DNA of 64,000 nucleotides from NCBI GenBank assembly GCA_002269645.1, contig NIVC01000068.1, positions 248,001 to 312,000 of the forward strand, given 5' to 3'. Of the stretch, positions 9,368-59,510 are shown in pieces. The stretch is from Macrostomum lignano. Lineage: Eukaryota. Each line of letters opens with the position of its first letter. Within the stretch, counting starts at the first letter, position 1. The notes beneath the pieces were generated by a model. The model saw only the letters and a program-made list of their open reading frames with translations. It had not been told where the DNA came from and searched no databases. The position numbers were made by a program, and so were the translations under genes.

Positions 9368-9408
<41 letters not shown>

Positions 9409-10060: not shown

Positions 10061-10098
10061 GTGAGTGTGTACTTTTTGGTCTGTACTTTCTGTACTTT

Positions 10099-16595: not shown

Positions 16596-16642
16596 CTCAA
16601 TTGGATCAACACTGCGCTGCACTGAAATCTGCATTCCCGCAG

Positions 16643-21323
<4,681 letters not shown>

Positions 21324-29820: not shown

Positions 29821-34005
<4,185 letters not shown>

Positions 34006-34087
34006 TGGTTATAGGAAGGGTCGCAGTGTCGATGGTCTGCCTGGTTTTAAATAAAAGCATTTGGGCAATTCTGTAGGAGATTCGCTG

Positions 34088-34430
34088 TCTGACAGGGGAT
34101 ACCTGTGTGTCTGACAGGGGATGCCTGTGTGTCTGACAGGGGATGTCTGGATGTCTGTGTCTGACAGGGGATGCCTGTGTGTCTGACAGGGGATGCCTGT
34201 GTGTCTGACAGGGGATGCCTGTCTGACAGGGGATGCCTGTGTGTCTGACAGGGGATGCCTGTCTGACAGGGGATGCCTGTGTGTCTGACAGGGGATGCCT
34301 GTATGTCTGACAGGGGATGCCTGTCTGACAGGGGATGCGTGTGTGTCTGACAGGGGATGCCTGTGTGTCTGACAGGGGATGCCTGTCTGACAGGGGATAT
34401 CTGTGTGTCTGACAGGGGATGCCTGTGTCT
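34088..34430. repeat. 22/18-bp minisatellite
   Basis: Unit CTGACAGGGGATGCCTGTGTGT and shorter variant. Confidence 0.9.
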
Positions 34431-34819
34431 GCCGGTGCTTATCGAATTACACAGAAGAGAATGTGCTTCCAACAGGAAATTCTTCTGTCAAACTTCTTTC
34501 GAACATTAGCATTTATTACCATCGGTAGCCTTTTCTGCTCAATTTTTTCCCCGACCTAATGAGCGCTTAAAAGATTGCGCGATTTCTTATAAATTATAGT
34601 CGTCAGGCAGAAGAGCATGCATGCCCTGCCCGGCTGGCCTCAAGCTCTTAGCAAGGGGCGCGGACGCATGAAATCGTACTGTACCAACCAAGCCCGGCAT
34701 TGCAAATGCAAGCGGCAAGAACTGTGAACTACTAGAGGCCACGACCGCCTCCCCTGCCCCCCACCACCCCGCGGAGAAACACGCGAGCGCACGCGCGCCC
34801 AAGTGGAGTGCAGCAGCAG

Positions 34820-38500: not shown

Positions 38501-39217
38501 AAGTTGAAATATTCGTTATATTTGTTTTGGCCTTAAAATGACAAAAAGTGCATCCAAAAAAGAAAGTACCAACGTACACAGAGTCTATACAGATAAGATA
38601 AAGGAATATTTAAGTTCAGAGCTAATGGTATCTTTGAGAAAAAGATTTTACAAACAGGAATATGCTAATTACACAAATTGGCTTGATTGCACTCCGACTA
38701 ACTAACAATTTAAAAAATCAATCGGCAAAACTGACCATTTTTCAGTTAAAGAATTTACTGTTATTGCAAGGTGCACTTAGCATTGAAGCAAAGGATATTG
38801 ACAAGCTAGCAAAGCAAAGCAAACTGTTAAGCAAAGCAAAGCATTGCGAAACAATACAGTGACAGCTATGCATATTAAATAGCTAAAAGACTAATAACAA
38901 AGCGCAGCAATACAGGCAACGATTTAAAGAAGAATTTCTAATAAAAATCCGCTATAAATTTTATTGAATAATAAAAAACTGATTCAAAACATTAATTTAC
39001 ATAGCATATACACGCACTATACATAGTGGGGGTTATGAATACATAAATATAAATATATCATAAAAATGATTTGTTGTTAAAAAGAGGCAGCGAGTGAGAG
39101 ACAGGCAGACAGAAGAAGAATTTAAAAAATATAAAAAAACTCTTCTTAAACAGGTTCCTCAAGTCTGTTCAACATTAGCATTATAATATTAATATTCAAC
39201 TGTTAACTAGCGAATCA

Positions 39218-40094
39218 TCAGAGCGTAGTGTACGTGAGTTCCTGACGGTCCAGTCCAGATGCAGCGCCGCTAGCAGAGGAGGCTGAGACAGCGCCGCCAG
39301 CAGAGGAGACGGCCACGGTGAGGGCGGGAAGGCCGGAGACGGCCTGAATGGCGCCGCTGGGTCCACCGGAGAGGGCGGCAGCGGCGGCAACGGAGGTGGC
39401 CAGCTGGCTGGGGTCGGACACCAGCAGCAGGTTGGTGAAGTTCGGGAAGCCCAGCTGCTGACCGCTGATCAACTGGAAGGAGGGAGCCACGGCCGCTGCG
39501 GCGCCCCAGGGGTCCGTTGGCGCGCTCGGCGCCCCGCTGGCGCCGCCTCCGGCTGTCGCGGCGGCTGCGGCAGCGGCGGCCGGCTGATAATAGAGAGGCT
39601 GACACAGCTGCCATTCGCCTTGCTGGTTCATCACAGCGTATTGGGGAGTTCCGGCGAACGACGTGATGTTGGGGAGGCTGGCAATGACCGCCTGCTGCTG
39701 TTGTTGCTGCTGCTGCTGTTGGTGATGCAGCATCTGCTGATGCTGCTGCTGCTGCTGCACAAGCTGCTGCTGTTGAAATACCTGCTGGAGATAGAGAACA
39801 AATTATTTCATACTTTTATAGCATTTAGTGAGTTGTAAATAATCACGATCACGCAACGCCACAGGCGAAACCGTCCAACAACCAGCGCTGGCAACAAATT
39901 TGCACACTCCGCCGACTCCTGGGCACTTACAAGCAGGGTACGCACGCAAACACACGCTCACACAGGGTGTACAGCGGTCCTTTGACCTTCTAAATAGGTG
40001 CGAATCGCACACACGGAATCAGCATGGTGTACTCTTTACCTGCTGTTGCTGCTGCTGTTCTTGCTGTTTCATTGTGGCAACTTGTAGAAGCACA

Positions 40095-40125
<31 letters not shown>

Positions 40126-42903
40126 GGGCGGACTTGGCACCTCGACCTGATTTAATACGCTTTCCACTATTCGAAGACGCCGGCCCACTTTGGCCAGCTA
40201 AAGCAGCTTTGCTTTTGCCTTTGCCCTTGCTTTTGCCGCCGCCGCCGCTGCTGCCGGCGACGCCAATTTCGTCGATATTTGCGGCAGCGACTTCGCCAAC
40301 TGTAACGGCGCCTGTAGTAGCGTCGGTGCCGTTAGCGCCTGCGCCTGCGGCGGCTGCTGCGGCGGCTTCTGCTTTCCGTTTGCGACGACGCTCGGCTTTG
40401 AGCACAGATTTGGGATCGGGCTGGCTCACCCGCATCTCAGTGTAGTCTGTGAATACCTGGCCAAGCGATGAGGATTGGCATTGTTGGGATTTGAGGATGT
40501 CACTGCTGCAGGTCTGTTACCTAGCCAATATTATTCGTGAACGATGAGTAGATGCTAACAGGTAAATGAGCAGAGCATGAGCAGACTCAATGAGTAGAGC
40601 ATGAAGAGACTTAATAGGCAGAACATGAGCAGACTCAATGAGCAGAGGATGAGCAGACTCAATGAGCAGAGCATGAGCAGACTTTATAGGCAGAACATGA
40701 GCAGACTCAATGAGCAGAGCATGAGCAGACTCAATGAGCAGAGCATGAGGAGACTTAATAGGCAGAACATGAGCAGACTCAATGAGCAGAGGATGAGCAG
40801 ACTCAATGAGCAGAGCATGAGCAGACTCAATGAGCAGAGGATGAGCAGAGCATGAGCGAACTCAATGAGCAGAACATGAGCAGACTTAATGAGCAGAATC
40901 AATGAGCAGAATCAATGAGCAGACTCAATGAGCAGAACATGAGCATACTCAAGGAGCAGACTCTACTCAATGAGCGGACTCAATGAGCAAAATCAATGAG
41001 CAGAATCAATGAGCAGACTCAATGAGCAGAGTATGAGCAGACTCAATGAGCAGAACATGAGCAGACCCAATAAGCAGAGCATGAGCAGACTCAATGAGCA
41101 GAACATGAGCACTCAATAAGTACAGAATTAAAAAGACGAGATGACATTAAAAAAGACAACAAGTTTCATTGATTAATTTATCAGCTCACCAGCTCAGCGT
41201 TGGGCACAGGGCCTGTCCTGCCCAAGATTTGGTCTCGCATTTTGCGCAGAGCAATGTAGAACGGCAGTTTATCTGCAGCTCTGGGCAGCTGGGCGCACCT
41301 GGCACTGGAGGAGGGCATCACGAATACGGCGATGTCGTCTGTGCCAGGCAGGGGGCCCGGCTGCTTGCCCATGTAGAAATTCTTGTTGCCAACAAATGCC
41401 TCGTAGATGCCTGCGGGAGGGAGACGGCAGCTTCTCTGCAGTAGATTGAGAATCTCATCCTCACATCGTAGAGAGTCTCAGATAGTATAGAGAAGAATCT
41501 CAACCATGGGATTGCATAGAAAAGAATCTCACCCCTAAGATTGCATAAAAGAGAATCCTACCCTTAAGATTTCATAGAGACAGTATCTCACCCTAAGAAG
41601 ATATAGACATTTAGAGGTTAAGAATCTCACCCATAGACTCAGTGTTAAGAATCTCACCCATAGACTTAGTGTTAAGAATCTCACCCATAGACTCAGTGTT
41701 AAGAATCTCACCAATAGACTTTAGGGCTAGCAACCTGGCCAGTATATTACACCCGAAGAGCAAAGTAGTGCTAGCTTACCTTTGCCATTGAAGACAGCAA
41801 TTTTCGGTTTGTGCCGTTTCAGCTTTGTTAACAATATCTCAGCTGCTTCTTTCATCTCTTTCCTGCATTAAATATGATTTAACAAAAACGGCTGTATAAT
41901 GATTTTTTCGATACATATCGGCTAGAAATTAAACAAGCAGTTGTACAGGCTTCTTACCTGGTCAAATCGGCGGCCCCTTTGATCGGGCGGGTAACGACGT
42001 TGGTAAAACCGATGCCGAACTGACAGATCCGATAATCGTCATGGCAACTAAGCTGGGCGCTGATAAGCCCGCTCTCGGTCAGGCAGGACCAGAAGTGGTT
42101 GCCAGGGCCCGCATAGTGATGCCCGGAGTACACGGCGGATAACATGGGGTTGAGGCCGATCTGGGAGGTCAGAGAGCTGCTCAATGTCAGACTGTGAGAC
42201 GGCGACTCAAAGCACACAGGTACTCACCACTACAATGTCCAGGCCGTCAGCGAGGTAGTCTGGTAGGGCGGTGATGGTGCTGGGCAGCGGCTGGTTTTGC
42301 TCGTCCACCAGCAGCTGGCTGCGGAACTTCTCGCAGCGGGAACAGGCGCCGATAGCATTCAGCTCCAGGCGCTGGCGCTTCGTCAGCAGGCTGTAATTGG
42401 AGGGCTGGCTGTGTCAGCTTGGTGAGTGGCTGTGTCATGCAGCTGGGTATGTGGCTGTGTCAGCTTGGTGAGTGGCTGTGTCAGTTAGGTATGTGGCTGT
42501 GTCAGCTTGGTGAGTGGCTGTGCCATGCAGTTGGGTATGTGGCTGTGTCAGCTGGGTGAGTGGCTGTGTCAGCTGGGTGAGTGGCTGGGTCAGCTGGGTG
42601 AGTGGCTGTGTCAGCTGGGTGAGTGGCTGTGTCAGCTGGGTGAGTGGCTGTGTCAGCTGGGTGAGTGGCTGTGTCAGCTGGGTGAGTGGCTGTGTCAGCT
42701 GGGTATGTGGTTGTGTCAGCTGGGTATGTCGTTGTGTCAGCTGGGCGGGTGGCTGTGTCAGTTGGGTGGCTGTGTAAGCTGTGAGTGGCTGTGTCAGCTG
42801 GGTGGCTGTGTCAGCAGACAGCAAATGGGTAGCACCTGACCTTTCCACATTTTTTGCTCCAGGTGGTATCACAACAGGTTTGTTAATAAGCTGTTGCTGC
42901 TGC

Positions 42904-42941
<38 letters not shown>

Positions 42942-43229
42942 CTGTTGCAAAAGCATCAGGTGCTGCTGCTGCTGTTGCTGCGGAGTGGCCGGAGGGGTCG
43001 GCAGGTGCACAGAGGTCACAGATGAGCTGGGCTGAGACACGGGACTCATGAGATGATTGACTTGATGTTGCTGCTGCTGTGGCTGCTGAATGATCACGCC
43101 AGACTGCTGTTCTCCGTTAACCATGCCGTTACCAGGGACATTTTGAACGATCACTGGCTGCTGGGCATAGGAGGCCGCTGAGTTGGTGTGGTGATAAGCA
43201 GGTGCGAAAGTCTGTCCAGCTGCAGTCAT
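39218..43229 (-). CDS. TDG: G/T(U) mismatch-specific thymine/uracil DNA glycosylase (UDG family 2), copy A, 679 aa. Exons 43229-42841, 42390-42228, 42160-41958, 41862-41780, 41410-41190, 40456-40040, 39781-39218
   Basis: Spliced core [40 protein letters not shown]...GIGFTNVV...-KPKIAVFNGK-GIYE...VMPSSSARCAQLPRAADKLPFY matches hallmark TDG motifs; canonical splice sites, exon total 2040 nt in frame. Confidence 0.93.
40563..41118. repeat. Modular AATGAGCAGACTC/AGCATG minisatellite in TDG copy A intron 5
   Basis: 13- and 24-bp modules; homologous array at 46735-47710. Confidence 0.9.
41490..41720. repeat. Degenerate 27-29-bp repeat (AGAATCTCACCC core) in TDG copy A intron 4
   Basis: Homologous to array at 48085-48450. 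Confidence 0.7.
42405..42815. repeat. 21-bp minisatellite in TDG copy A intron 1
   Basis: Unit TGGCTGTGTCAGCTGGGTGAG; source of the LTQP/WLCQLGE ORFs. Confidence 0.9.
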
Positions 43230-43489
43230 AATTGCTTAATAGTTAATAAAAAATTTGCTGCTCGAGTTCACTTGTTTCGCTGCCGTACTGCGATGAAATT
43301 TTATTCTTCAATAAATAAATTTATCAATATTAAGGGTCGTTAAGGCCCGGTTTATCGGTTATAATCGAAGATCGAGTTGCAACTTGGTAAAGAATACAAG
43401 CAGCCTGAAATTGTGTTTTGTTAATGACGATCAATGCAAGTCTATGTCTTTGAAAGCGAATTAACTAACAATTATAGAGGCAGGATTTC

Positions 43490-43930
43490 AGCCAACCACA
43501 GAGCTGGAGATGGTTGGGCAGACAGTCAGCCAATCAGGGATGGTTAGGTAGGGCTCCAGCCAATCAGAGAGCTGGGGAATTTTAGGCAGGTTTCCAGGCA
43601 ATCAGAGAGTTAGGGATGATTGGGCAGGGTCCAAGCCAATAGGAGAGCTGGAAATCGTTGGACAGGGACCCAGCCAATCAGGGATGGTTGAGTAGGGTTC
43701 CAGCCAATCAGAGAGCTGGGAATGGTTAGGCAGGATTGCAGCCAATTAGAGAGCTGGGGATGGTTGGGCAGGATTGCAGCCAATTAGAGAGCTGGGGATG
43801 GTTGGGCAGGATTGCAGCCAATTAGAGAGCTGGGGATGGTTGGACAGGGTTGCAGCCAATTAGAGAGCTGGGGATGGTTGGGCAGGGTTGCAGCCAATTA
43901 GAGAGCTGGGGATGGTTCGGTAGGGAGCCA
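43490..43930. repeat. About 38-bp minisatellite carrying 10 CCAAT boxes, upstream of TDG copy A
   Basis: Unit GCAGCCAATTAGAGAGCTGGGGATGGTTGGGCAGGATT; CCAAT at 43530, 43560, 43636, 43674, 43704, 43742, 43780, 43818, 43856, 43894. Confidence 0.9.
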
Positions 43931-45515
43931 GCCAAGCAGAAAGCTTTGTGGGAGTGATACTTATGAATAGCTAGCAAATAGCACGCCGCCAAAGAAGCAA
44001 AAATGCAATACACAGTCGAGTCAGAAGACAGACAGCAAGCGCATAGAACAGGAGAGACATGTGTATTTGAAAATTTCTCTGCAATACATAAACATTTCCG
44101 ATTCATTTACTGAACTATATATAGAGGCAGAGAATAGTGAGACACATATGAGTAACATGATCATATTAATAAAGGATCCAAAATTACATAATTTCCTCAG
44201 TGCCTGTGCTAATCAAGCAGAAAACAGTTTACTCAATACTAGCACAGCATTTTAATCGGTAAGCTGATTTATTATTTAGAACCAACAATAGTACACAAGA
44301 ATGATCCTATATAATGATATGAATTAAACTTATCTCAAAACTGTAATGACAATATATATAAGACAGCTAAGCAGTAAAAATGCCGCCAACAATTATTTTT
44401 AAAAAAGAAAAAAACACTGGATAGAGACGGAACCATAAAACGAATTATAACAAATACCTAGTAGTAATAAGCAGTATTAAAAATGAGTTAAATATATATA
44501 CGCGACAATAACACCGTTGCCATTAGTCAGCTTTCATGTAAATATATAATTTAATGTACATAGACAGCAAGCAGTGGATCTGTACAGAAGATGGAATGCA
44601 TGCTTAGAGACAATAGAGCTGTGGACCAACATGTATACAGTTTCTATATAATCATATAAAGGGGATTTAACTGGGTCGGGGCCTGCTGCGGTCGCCTTAC
44701 TTAAAACCAATTTTTTATACATTTCAGTAAATATTACTACTAACAGTAGAAAACTGAGAGACATAAAAACAAACAAGCAAAATTAAACAATGAAGCGGAG
44801 AAGCGAGTTAATAGCTACTATTAGTAACCAGCAGTCGGCATGAGAAAAGAATGGGAAATATAATTTTAGCACACAGAAATTTTCAAGTTTGCTAAACAAT
44901 AAAGCAGAAATGAAATTAACTCAACCAGCTCAAGTGCATGCTGATTATCTGTACAGAATTAATTTTAATATGAGTAAAAACTTCACAGCACAGCAGGCAG
45001 CAGGCAATCACTTGAAGCAGCAAAAAATTGGTTTCATAATTCTGTTAGCTGCAGAAGTCAGAATATAATATTTAACACTCAACAAATATTACAGAGGATT
45101 CTATTATTTTATATTATTGTTAAGAAGTGCAATAAAGGTTTTAAAAGCGATTCAAATAACACCAAACATGCACAGTTTGTTTAATTACTATACGCGTGAT
45201 GCATTTAAAAACAAAAAATCAATAATATATTCAACATTATATTTATAGATAAATATATGATCAATGATAAAACAACTTGGCAGCAGAGGCTGGATGCGAC
45301 AGATGAAATATGGCTAAATTTTAAAATCAAACCACAAAGGTTTCAAACATCAAAACGTGCAAATCTTTTAAAACTACTTGTAGTAGCTCCTTGTTAACGC
45401 GTTTGACTTTCGCTTTAAAAGCAGCAAATGAAAACCGATCAACTACTCATAGTAGAATGTCCCAATAAATTTTTTTACCGCAACTAAACCCTGCAGATGC
45501 TACTAAAAAGAGATA

Positions 45516-45989
45516 TTAGAGCGTAGTGTACGTGAGTTCCTGACGGTCCAGTCCAGATGCAGCGCCGCTAGCAGAGGAGGCTGAGACAGCGCCGCCAGCA
45601 GAGGAGACGGCCACGGTGAGGGCGGGAAGGCCGGAGACGGCCTGAATGGCGCCGCTGGGTCCACCGGAGATGGCGGCAGCGGCGGCAACGGAGGTGGCCA
45701 GCTGGCTGGGGTCGGACACCAGCAGCAGGTTGGTGAAGTTCGGGAAGCCCAGCTGCTGACCGCTGATCAACTGAAAGGAGGGAGCCACGGCCGCTGCGGC
45801 GCCCCAGGGATCCGTTGGCGCGCTCGGCGCCCCGCTGGCGCCGCCTCCGGCTGTCGCGGCGGCTGCGGCAGCGGCGGCCGGCTGATAATAGAGAGGCTGG
45901 CACAGCTGCCACTCGCCTTGCTGGTTCATCACAGCGTATTGGGGAGTTCCGGCGAACGACGTGATGTTGGGGAGGCTGGCAATGACCGC

Positions 45990-46025
<36 letters not shown>

Positions 46026-49000
46026 GTGATGCAGCATCTGCTGATGCTGCTGCTGCTGCTGCACAAGCTGCTGCTGTTGAAATACCTGCTGGAGATAGAG
46101 AACATATTATTCTACATCGGTATTAATAACAATTGACAAAAACCTCCCAAGTCACAGAAAGTGCCCATGCCTGACAAGAGAAAATCAGAGCTCCTGTACA
46201 ACCTGTGTGAGAGTGCAGGACTTGTTTGCCATATCCATAGACATACCTGTTGCTGTTGTTGCTGCTGCTGGTGTTGCATTTCTTGTTTCATCCCTGCCAC
46301 TTGAAACAGAACAGTTTGTTGCTGTTGCGACGGCTGCTGCTGTTGCTGCTGTTGAGCAGTTTGTTGAGCCCCAGCTTTAGATTTTGAGCCTTTGCTTCGC
46401 TTTTTCTTCGGCTCGGCTGCTGACGCGGCGGCATTAGCGTTAGCGCCGCTTTGAACTGCTATGCCACCGGCGCCACCGGCTGCCGCTTCAGCGCCAGCAA
46501 CTGCGCCACCAGCTGCTGCGGCCGCCGCCTCCGCTTCGGCGGCTTTTCGTTGACGACGACGCTCGGCTTTGAGCACAGATTTGGGATCGGGCTGGCTCAC
46601 CCGCATCTCAGTGTAGTCTGTGAATACCTGGCCAAGCGATGAGGATTGGCTTTGATGGGATTTGAGGATGTCACTGCTGCAGGTCTGTTACCTAGCCAAT
46701 ACTATTCGTGAACGATGAGTAGATGCTAACAGGTAAATGAGCAGAGGATGAGCAGACTCAATAAGCAGACTCAATGAGCAGACTCAATAAGCAGAGCAGA
46801 CTCAATGAGCAGACTCAATGAGCAGACTCAATAAGCAGACTCAATGAGCAGACTCAATAAGCAGACTCAATGAGCAGACTCAATGAGCAGACTCAATGAG
46901 CAGACTCAATGAGCAGACTCAATGAGCAGACTCAATGAGCAGACTCAATAAGCAGACTCAATGAGCAGACTCAATGAGCAGACTCAATGAGCAGTCTCAA
47001 TGAGCAGACTCAATGAGCAGACTCAATGAGCAGACTCAATGAGCAGACTCAATGAGCAGACTCAATGAGCAGTCTCAATATGCCGACTCAATGAGCAGAG
47101 AATGACCAACCTCTATTAGCAAAACATGAGCAGAGGATGAGCAGACTCAATGAGCAGAGCATGAGTAGAACATGAGCATACTCAATGAGCAGACTCAATG
47201 AGCAGAGCATGAGCAAAATCAATAAGCAGAATCAATGAGCAGACTCAATGAGCGGAATCAATAAGCAGACTCAATGAGCAGAGCATGAGCAGACTCAATG
47301 AGCATACTCAATTAGCAGACTCAATGAGCAGACTTAATGAGCAGACTCAATGAGCAGAGCATGAGCAAAATCAATAAGCAGAATCAATGAGCGGAATCAA
47401 TAAGCAGACTCAATGAGCAGAGCATGAGCAGAATCAATGAGCAGAGCATGAGCAGACTCAATGAGCAGAGCATAAGCAGACTCAATGAGCAGAGCATGAG
47501 CAAAATCAATGAGCGGAATCAATAAGCAGACTCAATGAGCAGAGCATGAGCAGAATCAATGAGCAGAGCATGAGCAGACTTAATGAGCAGAGCATGAGCA
47601 GACCCAATAAGCAGAGCATGAGCAGACTTAATGAGCAGAGCATGAGCAGACTTAATGAGCAGAGCATGAGCAGACTCAATGAGCAGAGCATGAGCACCTA
47701 ATGAGCACAGAATGAAAAAGACGAGATGACATTACCACAGACAAGAGGTTAAATCGACTAATTTATCAGCTCACCAGCTCAGCGTCGGGCACAGGGCCGG
47801 TCCTGCCCAAGATTTGGTCTCGCATTTTGCGCAGAGCAATGTAGAATGGCAGTTTATCTGCAGCTCTGGGCAGCTGGGCGCACCTGGCACTGGAGGAGGG
47901 CATCACGAATACGGCGATGTCGTCTGTGCCAGGCAGGGGGCCCGGCTGCTTGCCCATGTAGAAATTCTTGTTGCCAACAAATGCCTCGTAGATGCCTGCG
48001 GGAGGGACACGGCAGCTTCTCTGCAGTAGATTGAGAACCTCACTCTCACATCGTAGACAGTCTCAGATAGTATAGAGAATAATCTTAACCCCAGGATTCC
48101 ATAGGGGAGAATCTCACTCTTGAGATTTCATAGAGAGGGTATCTCACCCTAAGATTGCATAGAAGAGTCTCAGTCTCAGCCATAAGACTGCATAGAGCAG
48201 AATCTCATCCATAAGACTGCATAGAGGAGAATCTCATCCATAAGACTGCATAGAGGAGAATCCGACCCCTAAGATTGCATAGAGGAGAATCTCACCCCTA
48301 AGATTGCATAGGGGAGAATCCCACCCCTAAGATTGCATAGAGGAGAATCTCACCCCTAAGATTGCATAGAGGAGAATCTCACCCCTAAAATTACATAGAG
48401 GAGAATCCGACCCCTAAGATTGCATAGAGGAGAATCTCACCCCTAAGGCTCTATCCTGCAAATCAAATCAATACCAACAAGCAATAAATCATTGTAGACT
48501 CTAATTACTCACCTTTGCCATTGAAGACTGCAATCTTCGGCTTGTGCCTGGTCAATTTTTGCAATAAAATTTCGGCACCCTGTTTCATTTCTTTCCTGGA
48601 AACAATATTCAATATGGGGTAGAGTTAAAACAAAGATAATTTCGATACATATCGGTAGCTAAAACGCTTAACTAAACAAGGAGACAGTAAACCATACCTG
48701 GTCAGCTCGGCGGCCCCTTTGATCGGGCGGGTAACGACGTTGGTAAAACCGATGCCGAACTGACAGATCCGATAGTCGTCATGGCAACTAAGCTGGGCGC
48801 TGATAAGCCCGCTCTCGGTCAGACAGGACCAGAAGTGGTTGCCAGGGCCCGCATAGTGATGCCCGGAGTACACGGCAGATAACATGGGGTTGAGGCCGAT
48901 CTGGGAGGTCAGAGAGCTGCTCAATGTCAGACTGTGAGACGGCGACTCAAAGCACACAGGTACTCACCACTACAATGTCCAGGCCGTCAGCGAGGTAGTC

Positions 49001-49621
49001 TGGTAGGGCGGTGATGGTGCTGGGCAGCGGCTGGTTTTGCTCGTCCACCAGCAGCTGGCTGCGGAACTTCTCGCAGCGGGAACAGGCGCCGATAGCGTTC
49101 AGCTCCAGGCGCTGGCGCTTCGTCAGCAGGCTGTAATTGGAGGGCTGGCTGTGTCAGCTTGGTGAGTGGCTGTGTCATGCAGCTGGGTATGTGGCTGTGT
49201 CAGCTGGGTGAGTGGCTGTGTCAGTTGGGTGTGGCTGTGTCAGCTGGGTGAGTGGCTGTGTCAGTTGGGTGAATGGCTGTGTCTGCAGCTGGGTATGTGG
49301 CTGTGTCAGCTGGGTGAGTGGCTGTGTCAGCTGGGAGAGTGGCTATGTCAGTTGGGTATGTGGCTGTGTCAGCTGGGTATGTGGCTGTGTCTGCAGCTGG
49401 GTATGTGGCTGTGTCAGCTGGGCGGGTGGCTGTGTCAGCTGGGCGGGTGGCTGTGTCAGCTGGGTGGCTGTGTCAGCTGTGTGTGGCTGTCAGTTGGGTG
49501 GCTGTGTCAGCTGTGTGTGGCTGTCAGCTGGGTGGCTGTGTCAGCAGACAGCAAATGGGTAGCACCTGACCTTTCCACATTTTTGGCTCCAGGTGGTATC
49601 ACAACAGGTTTGTTCATAAGC

Positions 49622-49653
<32 letters not shown>

Positions 49654-49986
49654 ATGCTGCTGCAAAAGCATCAGGTGCTGCTGCTGCTGTTGCTGCGGAG
49701 TGGCCGGAGGGGTCGGCAGGTGCACAGAGGTCACAGATGAGCTGGGCTGAGACACGGGACTCATGAGATGATTGACTTGTTGTTGCTGCTGCTGTGGCTG
49801 CTGAATGATCACGCCAGACTGCTGTTCTCCGTTAACCATGCCGTTACCAGGGACATTTTGAACGATCACTGGCTGCTGGGCATAGGAGACCGCTGAGCCG
49901 GTGTGGTGATAAGCAGGTGCGAAAGCCTGAGGCTGATGTGCAGATGCTGATGTAGGCAAAGTCAGCGCCTGGCCAGCTGCACTCAT
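45516..49986 (-). CDS. TDG: G/T(U) mismatch-specific thymine/uracil DNA glycosylase (UDG family 2), copy B, 678 aa. Exons 49986-49571, 49130-48968, 48900-48698, 48595-48513, 47995-47775, 46627-46247, 46085-45516
   Basis: Same 7-exon structure, phases and catalytic motifs as copy A; exon total 2037 nt in frame; no stops or frameshifts seen. Confidence 0.93.
46735..47710. repeat. Expanded AATGAGCAGACTC minisatellite in TDG copy B intron 5
   Basis: 13-bp unit dominates the first half, 24-bp modules the second half. Confidence 0.9.
48085..48450. repeat. 29-bp minisatellite in TDG copy B intron 4
   Basis: Unit AAGATTGCATAGAGGAGAATCTCACCCCT. Confidence 0.85.
49145..49545. repeat. 21-bp-based minisatellite in TDG copy B intron 1
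   Basis: TGGCTGTGTCAGCTGGG units. Confidence 0.9.
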
Positions 49987-51920
49987 CCTTTCAGCAGATT
50001 GTTTGATCGACGAAATTGAGCAAAAATTAACTAATACCTTGATGGACTCAGGTGTAAGTAACTAACTAAGCTGGATTATACTTATTCAGTAATAAAGCAA
50101 TAATTTTAGTGCTGTGCTGACAGGGTGATAGCGTCAAGTATCTCTGAGGGGATCCTTTGGGGGGAAAATTGATTTACGATCTGAAATAGGAATAGAAAAT
50201 CTTATTTTAATAATAGAATATTGCAATCATTAGCAATTTTTAATTGCTTGAACTTTATTTTTAAATAGTAAGTTTCAATAAAGTAAATGTCAAATGAGTG
50301 ACACAGTTGTGTAGATAATTTTGATTGAATGCTGAAATTTTAATCTAAAAATGCAATTGATTGTGAAATTAAATTAATCAAGTAAAGTACCTATCATAGG
50401 TAATACTAACAGAATATAATTATACCATTTGCAAAATAAGTTCTTTTGAAATACTATAAAAATTATATAGTCATTTTGTCTTTTAAGAAATTTTTGGTTT
50501 AAACATCCACTTGTAGGTATTAGTGCAAAAAACAGGCCATATTGAGACTTAAATTTCTTGTAAAAATTGGTACCACAAAATTTAAGTCCAATATCCAAAT
50601 CAAATGCTTCTTAAAGACTTAGTAAGTGATGAAATACCATGAAATTATGCTTAAATGTGTATCATAACAACATGTATGCAGGAAAAATTATCTGTATTGG
50701 TTCTATAAAGTTTGAAAAAATAACACTTTTCTATTCTTTATAATAGTTTATGCTATTATATTGTGTTGAACTTATACAAAATATTTTTGTTTCAATATAC
50801 TAAATATTTTGTTATACTATGCAAAATAGATTGAGGAATCATTTCTAAATGTATAGCCATAGGGGAATGACTATATAAAGGAGTGAATTTTGAGGATTTT
50901 TGAAGACTTTGAGAAAAAAACAGAGTAGAGTCAAAGAGCTCCTCAAAACTATCAAATAAAGTACAAGCTATATACAAACTTTTATAGAGTTAGATACAAG
51001 TTATTCCTTTCCAGAGTTCTAAGAATTGTTGAAAGAAATTTACTAAAAGGAAATGGGAATAATTTAAAGAGTTATATAAAGAAGAAAAATTGCTCTATGA
51101 CACAAATCTTAATGACACCTAGATTGGAAACCATTATATGTACTAGTAAAAGACTACTTAGACCATAATATATTAGACTGTTACAATAATACAGTAGACT
51201 AGTAAAAATTTAGAAATATAAATTAAATTATATAATTTTAATATACATAATTAATAACATTTATTATTTAATATAATAGTGTCAATTTCATCCTTAGAAA
51301 AGCCTACAATAGGAGTTCTGATACCAAAATATTAGGAAATATTGAAAACAAGAACATTAGTGCATACAATGGATATTAATATCAAGTTGGTACTTCTTTC
51401 ACTTGTTATTTGTAAAATTACCATAACAATCAAGACAGTTTACTAACTATGCTAAATATTAATTGTACACCAATATGAACAATAAGAAAATTCCACATGG
51501 CTTTTATATGCCAGATAATTTTTGCATGTAGGCCACCCTTTTGCATATAGATTATATATCAAAAACAAAATGACAATTGAATTATAAATGATAATCTTAG
51601 GCAGAAAACAAGGAAGTTAACAAATTAGATAAAGTCTATATTTTAGAGCATATTGATAGAATGCTAGAAAATTTTGGTAGGCCTATAAATGATATATTCT
51701 GGAATATGGTATTAGGTAAGCTAAGGTTGATAATAAGAACTACTAGATGTTACAATTGTATCAATATATAAAGAATAGGTTTAGGCCTTATATTAAATCT
51801 TTTAATAATTTGATAGTGTCCCACATTTAGGATCATATTATTTGTACAAGGAATATCTAGCATACATTTGTAACAACTAGCATATATTAGGTTCATATTT
51901 TTTAAGTCTTACAATGTACA

Positions 51921-52040
51921 TCTTTATCTATAAAAATGAAATCTGTGTATGTGTGTGTCTGTGGCCAATTTTGTTTGATATGGACTCCCAAACCACATAA
52001 CCAAATTATACCAAAATTTACACCCACCTTAAACTTTACA
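51921..52040 (+). mobile_element. Possible non-autonomous Helitron-like 5' end relic
   Basis: A/TCTTTATCTATAAAAATGAAATC followed by a short (GT)/GTCT tract resembles 5' ends of non-autonomous Helitrons; no 3' hairpin-CTAG end found. Confidence 0.3.
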
Positions 52041-52159
52041 CCCATCTGTAGAGCAAATTATTGCCTTTCAAAACTGAATATATATTAATATAAGATGACT
52101 GTTTAAATGATAAAAAGGCATGATCATATAAAAATGTCAAATTTTTTTCATACTATAGG

Positions 52160-52821
52160 TAGAGCTGTCAAAATTAGAGATTTTATTTGAGATGAGATTC
52201 GAGACAAGAAAGGCTTATAAGTTGAGAATTTCGAGACAAGACAAGACAAAGTAAATCTAAAAAATATATTTCAGAATTGCATCTTGTCTTGCTCTTATCT
52301 TGCCTTAAATTTCTTGATAAGATACAATTCTAAAATATATTTTTTATATTTTCCAGAATACTTTCTTAATTCTAGTTTAAATTCTTTGCTATTTATTCAT
52401 AAGAATTTATGCTTATAGCATTTAGGCCCTTGGCCATACTATGTCTATTATTAATTCGTCAAAAGACCTGTGTAGATTGTCTTTAAGTCTGCTATGATAC
52501 ACCTTGCTGCAGAACTGAAATGATAACTAAAAAAGTGCATATGCAATGCAAACTTGTATATAATGACATTCGTTAAATAATTGCTCAACATTGGCTAGAT
52601 TTTACCATTTGAAAATTGCCCTATCAAGCGTGTTACAACAAACAGTTGTATTTATATGAAAATTTGCTCCCCTTTTTATATCTTATCACTTTAAAGCTTT
52701 TGAAAAAAGGTATCAGAAAAATTCTTGAATCTCGTCTCGAATTTCTTGACAAAATTTGAGATTTCTCAAGACGAGAAAAAATGTTGAGATCTTGTCTCAT
52801 CGAGATCTTGTGACAGCTCTA
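52160..52821. mobile_element. hAT-type non-autonomous DNA transposon (MITE), 662 bp
   Basis: 11-bp TIR TAGAGCTGTCA...TGACAGCTCTA; 8-bp flanking duplication ACTATAGG (52152-52159) / ACTATAGC (52822-52829); subterminal GAGACAAGA/TCTTGTCTC repeats. Confidence 0.85.
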
Positions 52822-53189
52822 ACTATAGCGTATAGGAACGCAATCATTCTTTCATAAAAGTTTTCTTGAAATGATAGTCTTCTAAAACTAAATATATACA
52901 GACTAACTATTTAAATGTTTTTTAATTAACTTAGGCCTATAAAATGTTTTTTTTCAGTTTGAACAGACAATTAAGACATTTTTTCAATGGTGATTATCTC
53001 CTAAAACTAATAAGTTTGGCCCTAAGGCTAAGCAATGATTGTCATGTAAAATTATTATATATGTAACTAAACAATTATTTTTTTAATATATTATAAATAT
53101 ATAAATGAATGATAATAGTTTCATCAAAAATGAAAAAATATTTTTTTAATTTACGTCAATGTTTACATTGATACTAGACTAGAATAAGC

Positions 53190-53975
53190 GGCTCATTCCA
53201 TATAAGCATGGTCGTAACATGACAGGTTATTTTTACTTATAAAATGAAATCTAATAATAGAATATACTAAACCAATATTTTAAATGAAAGATTATTTTGT
53301 CTAGAATATATTTATAGAGTTTCATATAGATATCATCATTAGTATAGATGCTATTAAACCTTAAATGACACTTATGGTCGTAACGACAGGATTTTTGACA
53401 TATAGAAACTAAAAGGTAAAAGTCTTATAACATTTTTCATTTTTGATATTTTGCAATACATTTTTAAAATTTGACTAAGAACATCTTTAGAAATCATACT
53501 CTTTTATTAGAATATATAAACTCAAAAGGCAACAAAGATACAAAAGAAAAGGCAGCCTTATGGTCGTAACATTATGGTCGTAACATATTTTTTTCTGTCA
53601 ATTCAGTAACTTTGAGGTACTAATACATTAAAAATATAATAGATTAATTGGTCACCAATGCTTTTATCTGATGATACAAGTACTATACTTTTATCTATAG
53701 TTTGTTTCAACCTTCAAAAGCTTTCTATTTGTTTTTAAAAGGTACAAAATCTTAATGATGTCTTTTGCTTCGAAAAATGTCCAAATTTTTACAAAAATGA
53801 CTTTTTGCCAATTGATAACATACTAATCCAACATTTTACCATTCCTTTATTCTTAGATTGTATATATTGCACAATATAAACATTTGGTAAAAAAATAGGC
53901 TAATTAGGCAATGGCAAGCAAAAATATTGACTTTTTTCTATTTTCCAAATATGTCCATCTTATATGGAATGAGCC
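53190..53975. mobile_element. Non-autonomous DNA transposon, 786 bp, 17-bp TIR, 4-bp TSD AAGC, superfamily unassigned
   Basis: GGCTCATTCCATATAAG at 53190 and its reverse complement ending at 53975; AAGC at 53186-53189 and 53976-53979; internal ATGGTCGTAAC repeats. Confidence 0.85.
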
Positions 53976-56464
53976 AAGCATTAACATACAGATTTTTAGG
54001 CAACCATTGGTATATTTCACATATTAGTGCATCTTGTTTGGCATACTTGGTATATATAGGCCTAGTATATAATCAAATATATTTTTTGTAACTTCTAGCA
54101 TATCTATAGGCCTATGCCTAATATGATCCTGACTTCCATAGTCTATTTTGTTATAAGCCTAGTTATGCCAAAAATATGTTATAGTTATGGCTTATGCCAT
54201 TTAATAATTAAATTTTATTAAAATCTGTTTTGAAGTCAAGGCTCATGACTTTAAACTAGGCCTATAAGGCTAACATGATAATAGCTAGACTAAATAGGCT
54301 GAGCTATATATATGATCTAGATGGCTAGACCTATCTTATTGCATGGATGAGTAACACCAACAATAAATTGATATTAAATAGTGAGTAGGCCTGTGCCAGG
54401 TTGACATGCCCATATAATATAACATAAGCCTAAGCTATAAGGAAAGAAAGCCCAAGCATAATGCAAAGACCATTCTAGTAGGCCTAACAGTAGGCCTAGC
54501 AGGGACACTGGACAAGGCCACAAGGGTACATTGATCACAACTTTACAAGACAATGTAAACAAGTACCCAGTACCAGGAGGTACTACCACTACCATCTGAT
54601 GAAATAGGTCCTAGCGGTATAAAGGGGTGCCACCGAATTTGTCAACATCTAATTCGTCAACTCTGGTATAAAGGCTAAGCCTAGGGCCTAATAAAGCCAC
54701 AAGAGCTAGTCTAATCGGCTAATCCAATTGTTTCTATGATGAATTATAAGAAAAAATGCAGAAATTGTTAAATAGCGCAATTATGTGGTCAAACATCGAA
54801 TTGTAAGTTCAACGCACATTATGCACTAGAGGCTCTGTTTCGTAACAAAAGCAATCAAAAAAGGAAAATAAAGTAGCTATTTTTTTTAGAAAATCTTTAT
54901 ACGATGTATAATTAAAATAAAAAGATAAATGTCAAGAAATTTTACTTTTAGCATTCCTTAATAACTGATAGTACACTTTTATGCTATTTATGTTGATGCT
55001 TTCTATTATTTATACAATAAATTAAGCATAAAAATTAGTTTGTTGTTTAACTGCTTTATTCTTCGTGATTTACGGGCTCGATTCATGCATGAAGGAATAT
55101 ATCTATTCTATTCTTTCTATTCCTTCATCCATGGCTTGATTTTTTCGGCTAAGCGAGATGCTGTTGTGTTTCCTTATCTTACAAAGCTAATAGACCATAC
55201 ACCATACCGTTGCAGTTTTACGACAAATCGAAAACAATAGATATATATATATAAATCGATACATATACCTGCAAAAGGGATACATGCCTGCGATTTATAT
55301 ATATATTAGGCACGGATCGAATCTTATCATCATTAGTGCGTACATATACATGCAAAATTTCGTTTGCTTTTACGTGCCGGGTGCAGTTTCTGTGGTTATA
55401 ATACGTACACGTACGGCCATGTCAAGTTGACTTACTGTAAATTGTCCGGCCCGTCGTATAATAAAATAAAATGTACATGTATACATATACACAGTAGTAC
55501 ATGTACGTGCAAAAAACAGCATCAAAAAACGAGGATGTTTATGTAGCAGCAGTCAGGATGAAGGGCAACAGTGGGGTTGTTAGGGGCAGTGCAGATGAAG
55601 AATATCAGTGAGGATGTGAAAGATCAGGGAGCTGGGTGTAGCGCAGCAGTCGACGCGGATTAAGATTCAAAGAGTCGAGGGTATGCTACAGTAATAGCAG
55701 CAGTCACGGATTAAGATCAAGGATCGAGGGTGTAGCGCAGCAGACGTTGAATTAAGGATTAGGGAAATCAGGGTGTAGCAGCAGCGGCAGTTACATTAAG
55801 TGTAGTAGAGATGCCGGTGTAGATGAAGTTAGGTGAAAGCTAATAGAGTTTTTTCTCAGTAAATGCATATGACGTAAAATTCAGTAAACTTCAGTGGAAA
55901 CTCATGCAATGTCATTACCCTAGGGAATTTTAGCTCAGCAATTTGTTCCCAGGTCAACTCATGATTGAGCCTGCGATAAAAAAAACTATGAACCACGCGG
56001 TGGGGTTTATATGCAGGCTGAAATGTTCAGCTGACTAAAATCCCATTAAGCCTAGAATTGCAACTTTTTTTACGACACGCAAGGATGACAGACAGTTTGT
56101 CCTTGACTCTTCCTGACATGATGCAGGTTTATGCGGGCTTGTTCTCGAACCCATGCCCAGCATGCACACGCACATGATGCCTATATTAGTGTACAATAAT
56201 ACCATGGTTATACACACAGCAGGTTCCAGAGGGATCCCAGCTCCAATGCAGGAAACCTGAATAAATTTACAAATTTTTAAACCTTTGAATTCATTTAAGC
56301 TCTGATAGTAACTGTATGGAAGTCCACATTGGGAGGCTGGTGTAAGTAATTCATTTATCTATGCTTTTCAAAGCTCTAATTTTATATCTAGAGGTTCATA
56401 TTTTAGAACTAAAGGCTGTAATTCCAGATATAAAGCTTTAATTCCAAATTTACAGGCTGTAGTC

Positions 56465-57290
56465 TAGAGGCTGTAAATTTAGATCTAAAGACTACAACTA
56501 CAGATCTAGAGGCTATAGCTACAGATCTAGAGGCTATAGCTACAGATCTAGAGGCTATAGCTACAGATCTAGAGGCTGTAAATCCAGAACTAGAGGCTGT
56601 AAATCGAGAACTAGAGGCTGTAAATCTAGATCTAGAGGCTGTAAATCCAGAACTAGAGGCTGTAAATCCATAACTAGAGGCTGTAAATCTAGATCTAGAG
56701 GCTGTAAATCCATAACTAGAGGCTGTAAATCTAGATCTAGAGGCTGTAAACCCAGAACTAGAGGTTGTAAATCTAGATCTAGAGGCTGTAAATCTAGAAC
56801 TAGAGGCTGTAAATCTATAACTAGAGGCTGTAAATCTAGATCTAGAGGCTGTAAATCCAGAACTAGAGGCTGTAAATCCAGAACTAGAGGCTGTAAATCT
56901 AGATCTAGAGGCTGTAAATCCAGAACTAGAGGCTGTAAATCCATAACTAGAGGCTTTAAATCTAGATCTAGAGGCTGTAAATCCAGAACTAGAGGCTGTA
57001 AATCTAGATCTAGAGGCTGTAAATCTAGATCTAGAGGCTGTAAATCCATAACTAGAGGCTGTAAATCTAGATCTAGAGGCTGTAAACCCAGAACTAGAGG
57101 CTGTAAATCTAGATCTAGAGGCTGTAAATCCATAACTAGAGGCTGTAAATCTAGATCTAGAGGCTGTAAACCCAGAACTAGAGGCTGTAAATCTAGATCT
57201 AGAGGCTGTAAATCTAGATCTAGAGGCTGTAAATCCAGAACTAGAGGCTGAAATTCCAGAACTAAAGGCTGAAATTCCCGATCTAGAGGC
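56465..57290. repeat. 21-bp minisatellite, about 38 copies
   Basis: Units AGATCTAGAGGCTGTAAATCT / AGAACTAGAGGCTGTAAATCC. Confidence 0.95.
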
Positions 57291-57716
57291 TTTTACAGTA
57301 CTGTATGCAGTTCCTCCACGGCTAATGGTACATCGAACTCCCTTTTCAAAGCCTCGTTTGTAAGCCAGCTCAGCCCAGGCCGCATTGTGTATCCCATCGC
57401 CCCCAGAGGCGGATCAGCTTTTATTCCCCCCACCCGCCGAATCTCCCATCCGCTTTGCAGTTTCTATCGAATCCATCGAACCCAAATAATGAAAGGGCAA
57501 TCCCAGCCAAGTGGGGAAGAGAGATAAAGGGGTGGAAGGGATATCCGGAGGATTAGGACCGTCTAATTTTATTGACAGAGAGAGAAGGGAAAGAGGTGGC
57601 AGTGACGCAGCCTTCATCCTGAATATGCAGATCGGGGATAGAAAACTTGTATTGCCAACTGCTGCTAGCACTGCGGCTGTAAGACTGCTGACTGACTGTG
57701 GCACTGGGATATTCGG

Positions 57717-58130
<414 letters not shown>

Positions 58131-58420
58131 CGCAAACTCCTCAACCGCACAGTGGCAAACACCGAAGCGAATGTAGAAAAACAGACAAATGAGCCGCATT
58201 TTTCCTAAAGCACGAACTTTTAGACGAATTCAGTTTTGGGAATCGAAACTGGAGCGGCCCGCTGGCATCGATCGATAAAGGGAGTTCCTGGGGCGTCGAC
58301 AGAAATACCCCGGCTCTTCGTCACTCTTTTCGGTGAAACTCTGATCGATTTTCTGCTTTAAAATGATTATAGTGCTCTAAAAGAAGTTAAAGGGATACAT
58401 TTGTATGGAAACTTTAACAA

Positions 58421-59326
<906 letters not shown>

Positions 59327-59510
59327 TCTGTTGGAAAGACATGACAGAAAAGCCGGAGGCTGTTTAAGCCAGTCTTGCAGTGGCTGGAACTTGTCAGCCA
59401 ATAGAAACGAATGAAGGTATAAGTGCAGTATATAAACTCATTCACTCAGTTGGGTTTTTTGCAGCTTTATGTCTATACACAATAATATTGAAGGGCAGTG
59501 ACAATTTCCA

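What the first reader, a model, noticed from the sequence alone, without database searches (positions are those of the whole stretch)
39218..49986. Old tandem TDG duplicate pair with patchwork identity, suggesting recurrent gene conversion
Seen: two intact 7-exon copies about 6.3-6.8 kb apart in the same orientation. Exon 2 differs at about 1/163 nt, the 67-bp intron 2 is identical, and exons 3, 5 and 7 are near-identical. Exon 4 differs at 20/83 nt (mostly synonymous, 4 aa changes), intron 3 barely aligns, and exon 6 is near-identical for about 60 nt then diverges sharply. Homologous intronic minisatellites differ in length (intron 5 about 550 vs 970 bp). Inference: an ancient duplication kept by purifying selection, with conversion homogenising most of the catalytic core while the basic Ala/Gly/Lys linker and upstream regions diverged. 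TDG is usually single-copy in animals.
Basis: partly seen in the sequence, partly recalled or inferred. Interest (0 to 1): 0.7.

Follow-up and report, generated by a model that had tools for sequence, protein, structure and literature searches.

The report
Flatworm TDG tandem pair, gene conversion
Two neighbouring copies of the DNA-repair gene TDG in the flatworm Macrostomum lignano are an old duplicate pair that repeatedly copy stretches of sequence onto each other; it is a clean but ordinary example of a well-known process.

Summary
Two intact 7-exon TDG genes lie head-to-tail on the minus strand: A at 39218-43229 (680 aa) and B at 45516-49986 (679 aa). Identity is a sharp mosaic. Exon 2 differs at 1/163 nt, intron 2 at 0/67 and exon 7 at 8/567. 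Exon 4 differs at 20/83, intron 3 at 42/95, and exon 6 diverges after 74 nt.

The window is Macrostomum lignano assembly Mlig_3_7, contig NIVC01000068.1. A paralogous subgenome contig (NIVC01001001.1, L001) carries the same pair (A', B'), so a four-sequence test was possible.

- In intron 3, exon 4 and exon 6, 158 informative sites group A with A' and B with B', and none group A with B.
- In intron 1, exon 2, intron 2, exon 5, intron 6 and exon 7, 23 sites group A with B and A' with B', against 2 (Fisher p = 3e-27).
- Tract edges differ between the two contigs.
- Synonymous divergence between A and B is saturated in the unconverted islands (pS 0.62-0.82). Elsewhere it is 0.056, and it is 0.05-0.07 between subgenomes.

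The duplication is therefore ancient, and ectopic gene conversion has recurred independently in each subgenome. An assembly artefact and selection alone are both rejected. This is a new instance of a known phenomenon, of modest interest.

The parts
39218..43229 (-). TDG copy A (downstream copy), 7 exons, 680 aa. Exons: 43229-42841, 42390-42228, 42160-41958, 41862-41780, 41410-41190, 40456-40040, 39784-39218. Stop codon TGA.
   Evidence: Manual model with GT-AG introns and an open frame. Pfam UDG PF03167, E = 1e-15. Human TDG in the PDB, E = 7e-57. P0126 matches exons 5-6 exactly.
45516..49986 (-). TDG copy B (upstream copy), 7 exons, 679 aa. Exons: 49986-49571, 49130-48968, 48900-48698, 48595-48513, 47995-47775, 46627-46247, 46088-45516. 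Stop codon TAA.
   Evidence: The Mlig_3_7 annotation on this contig has a 679-residue gene whose 5' end is at window 49986.
41993..43190 (-). Homogenised tract 1 in copy A: most of exon 1, intron 1 with its 21-nt minisatellite, exon 2, intron 2, and exon 3 up to about 41993. The partner in B is about 48733-49930.
   Evidence: A-B differs at 4/390 over exon 2, intron 2 and the first 160 nt of exon 3, against 13/390 for A-A' and 10/390 for B-B'. Site patterns are of the A=B, A'=B' type. The first orthology-type sites are at 41966 and 41965.
41650..41966 (-). Unconverted island 1 in copy A: the last 9 nt of exon 3, intron 3, exon 4 and the 5' part of intron 4. A is still unlike B down to about 41494. 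The partner in B is about 48450-48706.
   Evidence: There are 38 + 18 + 35 orthology-type sites and none of the concerted type. Exon 4 differs at 20/83 between A and B, but only 2/83 between A and A' and 1/83 between B and B'. pS = 0.82.
40383..41493 (-). Homogenised tract 2 in copy A: the last 80 nt or so of intron 4, exon 5, intron 5 with its 13/24-nt minisatellite, and the first 74 nt of exon 6, which encode VFTDYTEMRVSQPDPKSVLKAERRR. The partner in B is about 46554-48078.
   Evidence: Exon 5 differs at 3/221 between A and B, with concerted-type sites. In L001 the corresponding tract is longer and almost identical: about 1 difference in about 600 bp.
39808..40382 (-). Unconverted island 2 in copy A: the rest of exon 6 (the Ala/Gly/Lys/Gln linker) and intron 6. 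The partner in B is 46112-46553.
   Evidence: Exon 6 has 102 orthology-type sites and no concerted-type sites. pS = 0.62 and dS is about 1.3. Intron 6 of A is unlike B, A' and B' (79/156 mismatches), whereas A'-B' differ at 2/156.
39220..39807 (-). Homogenised tract 3 in copy A: the last 23 nt of intron 6 and exon 7 up to the stop codon. The partner in B is 45518-46111.
   Evidence: BLASTN aligns 39217-39807 to 45515-46111 at 97.7%. There are 8 concerted-type sites against 1 orthology-type site, and that one is the second base of the stop codon.
43230..45515 (.). Unique 2.3-kb spacer between the copies. It is the upstream region of A and the downstream region of B, and contains a 38-nt minisatellite at 43537-43935.
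   Evidence: It has no similarity to the region upstream of B or downstream of A. It aligns to the L001 spacer at about 90.6%.

Best explanation
The window is Macrostomum lignano (assembly Mlig_3_7, contig NIVC01000068.1, about 248001-312000). It holds an ancient head-to-tail duplicate pair of thymine-DNA glycosylase genes. Both copies are intact and under purifying selection.

The patchwork identity comes from repeated, short-tract (about 0.6-1.3 kb), non-reciprocal ectopic recombination between the two copies, that is, interlocus gene conversion. Three regions are kept nearly identical, introns and synonymous sites included:
1. exon 1 to exon 3;
2. the 3' end of intron 4, through exon 5, to the first 74 nt of exon 6;
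3. exon 7.

Two islands have escaped conversion for a very long time and are saturated at neutral sites:
1. the end of exon 3, intron 3, exon 4 and the 5' part of intron 4;
2. the exon 6 linker, plus intron 6 in this contig.

Conversion continued independently in each polyploid subgenome copy of the locus after the subgenomes diverged, and the tract edges differ between them.

**Shown:** the gene structures, the mosaic, the site-pattern switch, the lineage-specific tracts and the selective constraint.

**Inferred:**
- The mechanism is repair of a break in one copy using the other as template, by synthesis-dependent strand annealing or double-strand-break repair.
- The islands persist because accumulated heterology blocks heteroduplex extension, possibly reinforced by selection for copy-specific residues.
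For: **Provenance.** L005 positions 1-14490 equal window 49511-64000 at 100%.

**A second locus carries the same pair.** L001 is collinear with the window at 90-99% and holds intact B' and A'.

**Site patterns.** The counts are 158:0 for orthology in intron 3, exon 4 and exon 6, against 23:2 for concerted evolution in intron 1, exon 2, intron 2, exon 5, intron 6 and exon 7. Fisher p = 3e-27. There are 11 runs, and 0 of 100000 permutations were as low.

**Within-pair versus between-subgenome divergence.** Intron 2 differs at 0/67 within each pair but at 4/67 between subgenomes. Exon 7 differs at 8/567 (A-B) and 4/567 (A'-B'), against 12/564 (A-A') and 15/567 (B-B').

**Lineage-specific tracts.**
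- Intron 6 of A' is B-type (2/156 from B'), while intron 6 of A is unrelated (79/156).
- From mid intron 4 to the start of intron 5, A' and B' differ at about 1 site in about 600 bp, while A and B differ at 46/141 in part of that stretch.
- The 5' edge of the tract in L001 lies just after the remnant of the A-specific 27-nt array.

**Neutral divergence.** pS is 0.82 in exon 4 and 0.62 in exon 6, against 0.056 in the rest of the gene. There is no flank homology.

**Constraint.** Omega is 0.15-0.28. The motifs GLNPM (catalytic Asn), GHHY, PGNHFW, GFTN and PSSSARCA align to human TDG.

**Independent gene model.** P0126 joins window B exons 5-6 to window A exons 5-6 with exact matches.
Against: - Only two independent lineages were available. 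The third contig ends in exon 3 of B'' and is identical there to B'.
- All contigs come from one PacBio assembly of one inbred line. Short-read polishing across near-identical paralogues could create or erase a few variants, and I could not inspect reads.
- Alignments inside the minisatellite introns 1, 4 and 5 are unreliable, so tract edges there are approximate.
- A GC-biased-conversion signature was not demonstrable. The single-copy paralogue in L002 shows the same GC3 profile, low in its exon 4 equivalent.
- Two sites in exon 3 (42137, 42083) and several in the minisatellite-rich introns 1 and 5 group A with B' and B with A'. Simple within-locus conversion does not explain these.
- Expression of both copies is only indirectly supported, by RNA-seq-based annotation (PMC5730564).
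Confidence: 0.87

Rival explanations
1. There is no conversion. The mosaic reflects unequal selective constraint along an old duplicate pair: strongly conserved catalytic exons against a free linker.
For: The near-identical exons 2, 3 and 5 encode the conserved glycosylase core. The diverged exon 6 encodes a low-complexity linker.
Against: - Identity extends to introns and synonymous sites. Intron 2 is 67/67, and pS is 0.056 in the homogenised part against 0.62-0.82 in the islands.
- Exon 4 is part of the core yet has saturated synonymous sites.
- A and B share derived states against A' and B' (23 sites against 2), which constraint cannot produce.
- Intron 6 of A' is B-type while intron 6 of A is not.
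Confidence: 0.02
2. It is an assembly artefact. Haplotypes or homeologues of a single TDG gene were stitched in tandem, or polishing homogenised or mixed the copies.
For: M. lignano is a hidden polyploid with three paralogous subgenomes, and 93% of read pairs map to multiple loci (PMC10733133). Two public gene models across this locus are chimeric.
Against: - Subgenome copies differ by about 2-7%, not by saturation. A and B have unalignable flanks, unalignable intron 3 and a 2.3-kb unique spacer.
- The same B-spacer-A order, with orthologous copy-specific exons 4 and 6, stop codons and flanks, is present on a second contig.
- An independently annotated model contains window-type B followed by window-type A.
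- Random mis-polishing would not give locus-consistent shared variants.
Confidence: 0.03
3. Unequal crossing-over, not short-tract conversion, produced the mosaic. Cycles of array expansion and contraction (3-copy and 1-copy intermediates) left hybrid genes.
For: Tandem same-orientation repeats with kilobase-scale identity are substrates for unequal exchange. The intronic minisatellites vary widely in length between all four copies, which shows frequent misaligned exchange locally.
Against: - At least three separate homogenised blocks alternate with two old islands in each gene. The spacer and both flanks stay unique and orthologous between contigs.
- A single crossover would homogenise everything to one side of the junction.
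- Producing interior patches needs paired crossovers, which is operationally the same as conversion.
Confidence: 0.08

Closest known systems
Interlocus (ectopic) gene conversion between tandem paralogues, i.e. concerted evolution with mosaic tracts. Textbook cases, from my own knowledge: primate gamma-globin and alpha-globin pairs, red/green opsins, RHD/RHCE, CYP21A2/CYP21A1P.
   Same: - Same-orientation neighbours a few kb apart.
- Tracts of hundreds of bp to about 1 kb with sharp edges, covering introns as well as exons.
- Paralogues closer to each other than to orthologues inside the tracts, with orthologous grouping outside.
- Independent events in separate lineages.
   Different: - The two lineages compared here are polyploid subgenome copies within one genome, not species.
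- The gene is TDG, for which I found no such report.
- No GC-bias signal could be shown.
Animal thymine-DNA glycosylase (TDG; UDG superfamily family 2, MUG/TDG), e.g. human TDG (PDB 1WYW, 2RBA, 5FF8)
   Same: - Pfam UDG domain.
- About 55% identity over about 205 aligned residues.
- Catalytic Asn motif, GHHY, PGNHFW, GFTN and the PSSSARCA loop are all present in both copies.
- A psi-K-x-E motif (VLKAE) sits where human K330 is SUMOylated. The alignment is off by one residue, so this is my inference.
   Different: - Long poly-Gln N- and C-terminal extensions.
- Two tandem copies, plus at least two more divergent paralogue types in the same species (P0002, P0003).
- Activity is untested.
Other M. 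lignano TDG paralogues: P0002 (BOX15_Mlig014568g2, locus L002) and P0003
   Same: The same family, 69-73% identical in the core, with the same ...VFTDYTEMRV.QPDPKS..KAERRRKRKAE segment after the core.
   Different: - The P0002 gene has no second TDG within 10 kb on either side, and it lacks introns 3 and 5.
- A and B share His in RHKPK where P0002, P0003 and human have Tyr. This suggests A and B are sisters relative to the other paralogues (small sample).

Membership tests
TDG/MUG glycosylases (UDG superfamily, family 2) | UDG-fold domain detectable by profile | tested here: met
   PF03167, E = 9.9e-16, 58.5 bits against a cutoff of 24.3. Human TDG chains, E = 7e-57.
TDG/MUG glycosylases (UDG superfamily, family 2) | Catalytic Asn in the G-[IL]-N-P motif (human N140), plus the GHHY, PGNHFW and GFTN motifs and the Arg insertion loop PSSSARCA (human R275) | tested here: met
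   All are aligned and conserved in the HMMER alignment to 1WYW. They are identical in A, B, A' and B'. Residue roles are from established knowledge of human TDG.
TDG/MUG glycosylases (UDG superfamily, family 2) | Excision of T or U opposite G (and of 5fC/5caC) | not testable with these tools
   Needs a biochemical assay of the recombinant A and B catalytic domains.
Interlocus gene conversion / concerted evolution of tandem paralogues | In some segments the paralogues are closer to each other than to their orthologues or homeologues, while other segments keep orthologous grouping | tested here: met
   23:2 concerted against 0:158 orthologous sites, Fisher p = 3e-27.
Interlocus gene conversion / concerted evolution of tandem paralogues | Homogenisation includes neutral sites (introns and synonymous positions) and has sharp boundaries | tested here: met
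   Intron 2 is 67/67. pS is 0.056 against 0.62-0.82. The switch falls within 27 nt in exon 3 (41993 to 41966) and after nt 74 of exon 6.
Interlocus gene conversion / concerted evolution of tandem paralogues | Independent events with different tract limits in separate lineages | tested here: met
   Intron 6 and the tract from mid intron 4 to intron 5 are converted in L001 only.
Interlocus gene conversion / concerted evolution of tandem paralogues | GC-biased outcome (elevated GC/GC3 in tracts) | tested here: inconclusive
   GC3 is 0.72-0.85 in converted exons against 0.46-0.57 in exons 4 and 6. The unpaired paralogue in L002 shows the same profile, so the difference cannot be attributed to conversion.
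Assembly artefact (haplotype or homeologue stitched in tandem) | Copies differ only at haplotype- or homeologue-level divergence, and the arrangement is not reproduced elsewhere | tested here: not met
   The islands are saturated and the flanks unrelated. The arrangement is reproduced on contig NIVC01001001.1 and in model P0126. Raw reads were not available.

The most novel reading that the evidence does not exclude
The two unconverted islands may be protected by selection rather than merely left behind. On this reading, exon 4 (a helix of the glycosylase domain with 4 fixed A/B differences, conserved between subgenomes) and the exon 6 linker (which directly follows the conserved VFTDYTEM...VLKAE segment that aligns to the SUMO-binding and SUMO-acceptor region of human TDG) define two functionally distinct TDG isoforms. 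M. lignano, a flatworm that unusually retains DNMT1 and DNMT3, would need both. Conversion would then keep the shared catalytic machinery identical, while selection removes tracts that overwrite the isoform-specific parts.
Probability: 0.25. Interest if true: 0.45.

Novelty: new member of a known kind. Interest (0 to 1): 0.33.

Why it matters
- **A well-controlled example of gene conversion.** One polyploid genome supplies its own replicate lineages, so tract lengths, tract edges and relative ages can be read directly. The locus could help calibrate conversion rates against subgenome divergence in M. lignano.
- **A warning for annotation and expression work.** Two public gene models here are B/A chimeras. 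Reads from exons 2, 3, 5 and 7 cannot be assigned to a copy; only exons 4 and 6 are diagnostic.
- **TDG copy number.** M. lignano has at least four distinct TDG genes per subgenome set. This may matter because the species keeps DNMT1 and DNMT3 (PMC9246332).

The phenomenon itself is textbook.

Tried and rejected
1. **GC-biased conversion.** Converted exons have higher GC3 than exons 4 and 6. The control paralogue without a tandem partner has the same profile, so I rejected this as evidence.
2. **Exact-protein look-up of the spliced A and B proteins.** A look-up of the exon 7 ORF found nothing.
3. **The first homologue search** was swamped by poly-Gln words: 147 real hits among 8000 candidates. 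A core-only search found no A-type or B-type proteins from other Macrostomum species. The duplication could therefore not be dated against speciation.
4. **The third subgenome contig** (L003) ends inside exon 3 of B'' and is identical to B' there, so it adds no independent lineage.
5. **Flank homology.** Smith-Waterman comparison of 600-nt and 2.3-kb flanks gave scores equal to shuffles. A larger original duplication unit cannot be demonstrated.
6. **A third TDG copy.** tblastn found none in the window or in L001.
7. **Literature.** Searches for TDG in flatworms and for gene conversion in Macrostomum found nothing on this locus.


Full report
**1. What is there**

The region holds two TDG-family genes on the minus strand. 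I read both copies base by base and built 7-exon models with canonical GT-AG introns and open frames.

- Copy A is at 39218-43229 and encodes 680 aa.
- Copy B is at 45516-49986 and encodes 679 aa.

The exon 5/6 junction (...AEL|VFTDYTEM...) needed an acceptor 10 nt upstream of the obvious one. Annotated Macrostomum proteins confirm that choice. Pfam finds the UDG domain. The core aligns to human TDG structures at E = 7e-57, with the catalytic Asn motif, GHHY, PGNHFW, GFTN and the PSSSARCA loop all conserved.

**2. The observation**

| Segment | A vs B |
|---|---|
| exon 2 | 1/163 differences |
| intron 2 | 0/67 |
| exon 3 | 5/203 |
| exon 4 | 20/83 (4 aa changes) |
| exon 5 | 3/221 |
| exon 7 | 8/567 |
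| intron 3 | 42/95 mismatches |
| exon 6 | identical for 74 nt, then about 32% mismatch with indels |

The homologous minisatellites are real.
- Intron 1 has a 21-nt unit.
- Intron 4 has a 29-nt unit.
- Intron 5 has a 13/24-nt unit, in arrays of 547 and 968 bp.

Similarity between A and B ends at the ATG and at the stop codon (TGA in A, TAA in B). The flanks score no better than shuffled sequence.

The mosaic is far beyond chance. The longest identical run is 219 columns, against a maximum of 100 in 5000 permutations.

**3. Provenance and a natural replicate**

The best database hit is a Macrostomum lignano protein, P0001 (94% identity). Its gene model spans 11.2 kb on contig NIVC01001001.1 of assembly GCA_002269645.1, held here as L001.

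L001 is collinear with the window at 90-99% identity. It contains its own intact tandem pair, B' and A'.

The neighbouring Kazal-domain gene has three annotated copies in the assembly. One of them lies on contig NIVC01000068.1 (L005), which is 100% identical to window 49511-64000. The window is therefore that contig, at about 248001-312000.

The annotation there has a 679-residue gene whose 5' end is at window 49986, which agrees with my copy B model.

M. lignano is a hidden polyploid. About 85% of its genome is present as three paralogous subgenome copies, with mean SNP divergence of 2.2% overall and 1.1% in CDS (PMC10733133). The window and L001 are two such copies. Their divergence here is dS 0.05-0.07.

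The third copy (L003) ends inside exon 3 of B'' and is identical to B' there.

**4. The four-sequence test**

I aligned A, B, A' and B' segment by segment and sorted the informative sites by how they group the four sequences.

| Segments | Sites grouping A with A' and B with B' (orthology) | Sites grouping A with B and A' with B' (concerted) |
|---|---|---|
| intron 3, exon 4, exon 6 | 158 | 0 |
| intron 1, exon 2, intron 2, exon 5, intron 6, exon 7 | 2 | 23 |

Fisher's exact p is 3e-27. Along the gene the two site types form only 11 runs, and 0 of 100000 permutations gave as few.

Intron 2 has no differences within either pair but 4/67 between subgenomes. Protein-level examples are visible. 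PVVIPP, GACS and ISAQ occur in both window copies. PIVIPS, GACP and ISDQ occur in both L001 copies.

Conversion has therefore acted after the subgenomes separated, in both lineages.

**5. Lineage-specific tracts**

- Intron 6 of A' differs from B' at 2/156 sites, whereas intron 6 of window A is unrelated to all three others (79/156 mismatches). In L001 the exon 7 tract therefore ran on through intron 6, and in the window it did not.
- From mid intron 4 through exon 5 into intron 5, A' and B' differ at about 1 site in about 600 bp. Window A and B differ at 46/141 in part of the same stretch.
- The 5' edge of that L001 tract lies just after two degenerate units of the A-specific 27-nt array.
- Many sites where A alone differs (exon 1, the 3' half of intron 4, intron 6) are best read as old A-type sequence that was overwritten in A' by B'.

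**6. Age and constraint**

By the Nei-Gojobori method, pS between A and B is 0.82 in exon 4 and 0.62 in exon 6 (dS about 1.3). Over the rest of the gene it is 0.056.

The duplication is thus at least an order of magnitude older than the subgenome split. The unalignable flanks and intron 3 are what saturation predicts.

Both copies are constrained. Omega is about 0.28 over the whole CDS and 0.15-0.18 over exons 2-5, for both A-A' and B-B'.

There is one oddity. The B linker shows 8.5 non-synonymous against 0.5 synonymous changes between B and B', whereas A shows 5 against 8. The numbers are small.

**7. Alternatives**

- **Constraint alone.** It cannot explain identical introns or derived states shared within a locus.
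- **A stitched-haplotype artefact.** It cannot give saturated islands, unrelated flanks and a unique 2.3-kb spacer. It would also not recur with orthologous copy-specific features on a second contig.
- **An independent check on the arrangement.** UniProt model P0126 consists of an exact stretch of window B (exons 5-6) followed by an exact stretch of window A (exons 5-6). From my own knowledge, such A0A1I8... entries derive from the earlier ML2-based annotation, so this would be a second assembly. I could not verify that here.
- **Unequal crossing-over.** It cannot be excluded for any single tract. It fits poorly with three interior patches per gene and a constant two-copy structure.
- **Raw reads.** I could not examine them. 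That is the main remaining caveat.

**8. Comparison and verdict**

This works like the classic cases of concerted evolution between tandem paralogues and meets the defining tests I could run. The exception is GC bias, where a control with the unpaired paralogue in L002 removed the apparent signal.

The proteins are members of the TDG/MUG family by domain and motifs. Activity is untested.

M. lignano has further TDG paralogues (P0002, P0003), so TDG is multi-copy in this species. The species retains DNMT1 and DNMT3 (PMC9246332), which gives the expansion some biological context.

I found no publication on this locus.

The finding is a new, well-documented instance of a known process, and interest is modest.

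Noticed in passing
window 53190-53975: A 786-bp insertion that is absent from the paralogous contigs L001 and L003. It has perfect 17-bp terminal inverted repeats (GGCTCATTCCATATAAG) and a 4-bp target-site duplication, AAGC. The empty site in L001 (around 6772) has a single AAGC. It looks like a MITE-like DNA transposon that inserted after the subgenomes diverged.
   Followed up: partly
L001 10001-21227 (P0001); P0126: Both public gene models across this locus are chimeras. P0001 joins B' exons 1-2 to A' exons 3-7: its first 218 aa match B' exactly and its last 529 aa match A' exactly. P0126 joins window B exons 5-6 (partial) to window A exons 5-6. The likely cause is spliced-read or transcript mapping across near-identical exons. 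Real read-through transcripts were not excluded.
   Followed up: partly
L002 11888-14507: The divergent TDG paralogue P0002 (BOX15_Mlig014568g2) has no second TDG within 10 kb on either side. Its equivalents of exons 3+4 and of exons 5+6 are contiguous, so it lacks introns 3 and 5 of the A/B genes.
   Followed up: partly
window 46247-46627 vs L001 13349-13729: The exon 6 linker of copy B has 8.5 non-synonymous against 0.5 synonymous differences between subgenomes. Copy A has 5 against 8. This could mean relaxed or positive selection on the B linker, but the numbers are small.
   Followed up: no
window 42137 and 42083 (exon 3): At two sites A matches B' and B matches A' (pattern C/T/T/C). Simple within-locus conversion does not explain them. 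Possible causes are an old A/B polymorphism resolved in opposite directions, recurrent mutation, or exchange between subgenomes.
   Followed up: no
window 62582-63598 (+): This is an exon of a Kazal-type serine-protease-inhibitor-domain gene (Mlig031223g3). It is 99% identical to P0121, and the gene is present in three subgenome copies.
   Followed up: partly
window 350-9700, 14500-16600, 18350-20800, 30000-34500, 56500-59400, 60700-62500: The window is dominated by long micro- and minisatellite arrays, which produce many spurious long ORFs. This agrees with the 15% simple and tandem repeat content reported for Mlig_3_7 (PMC5730564).
   Followed up: no
window 50000-54000: A 4-kb block with very low GC (26%) lies directly upstream of copy B. 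It is conserved at about 97% in L001 and L003.
   Followed up: no
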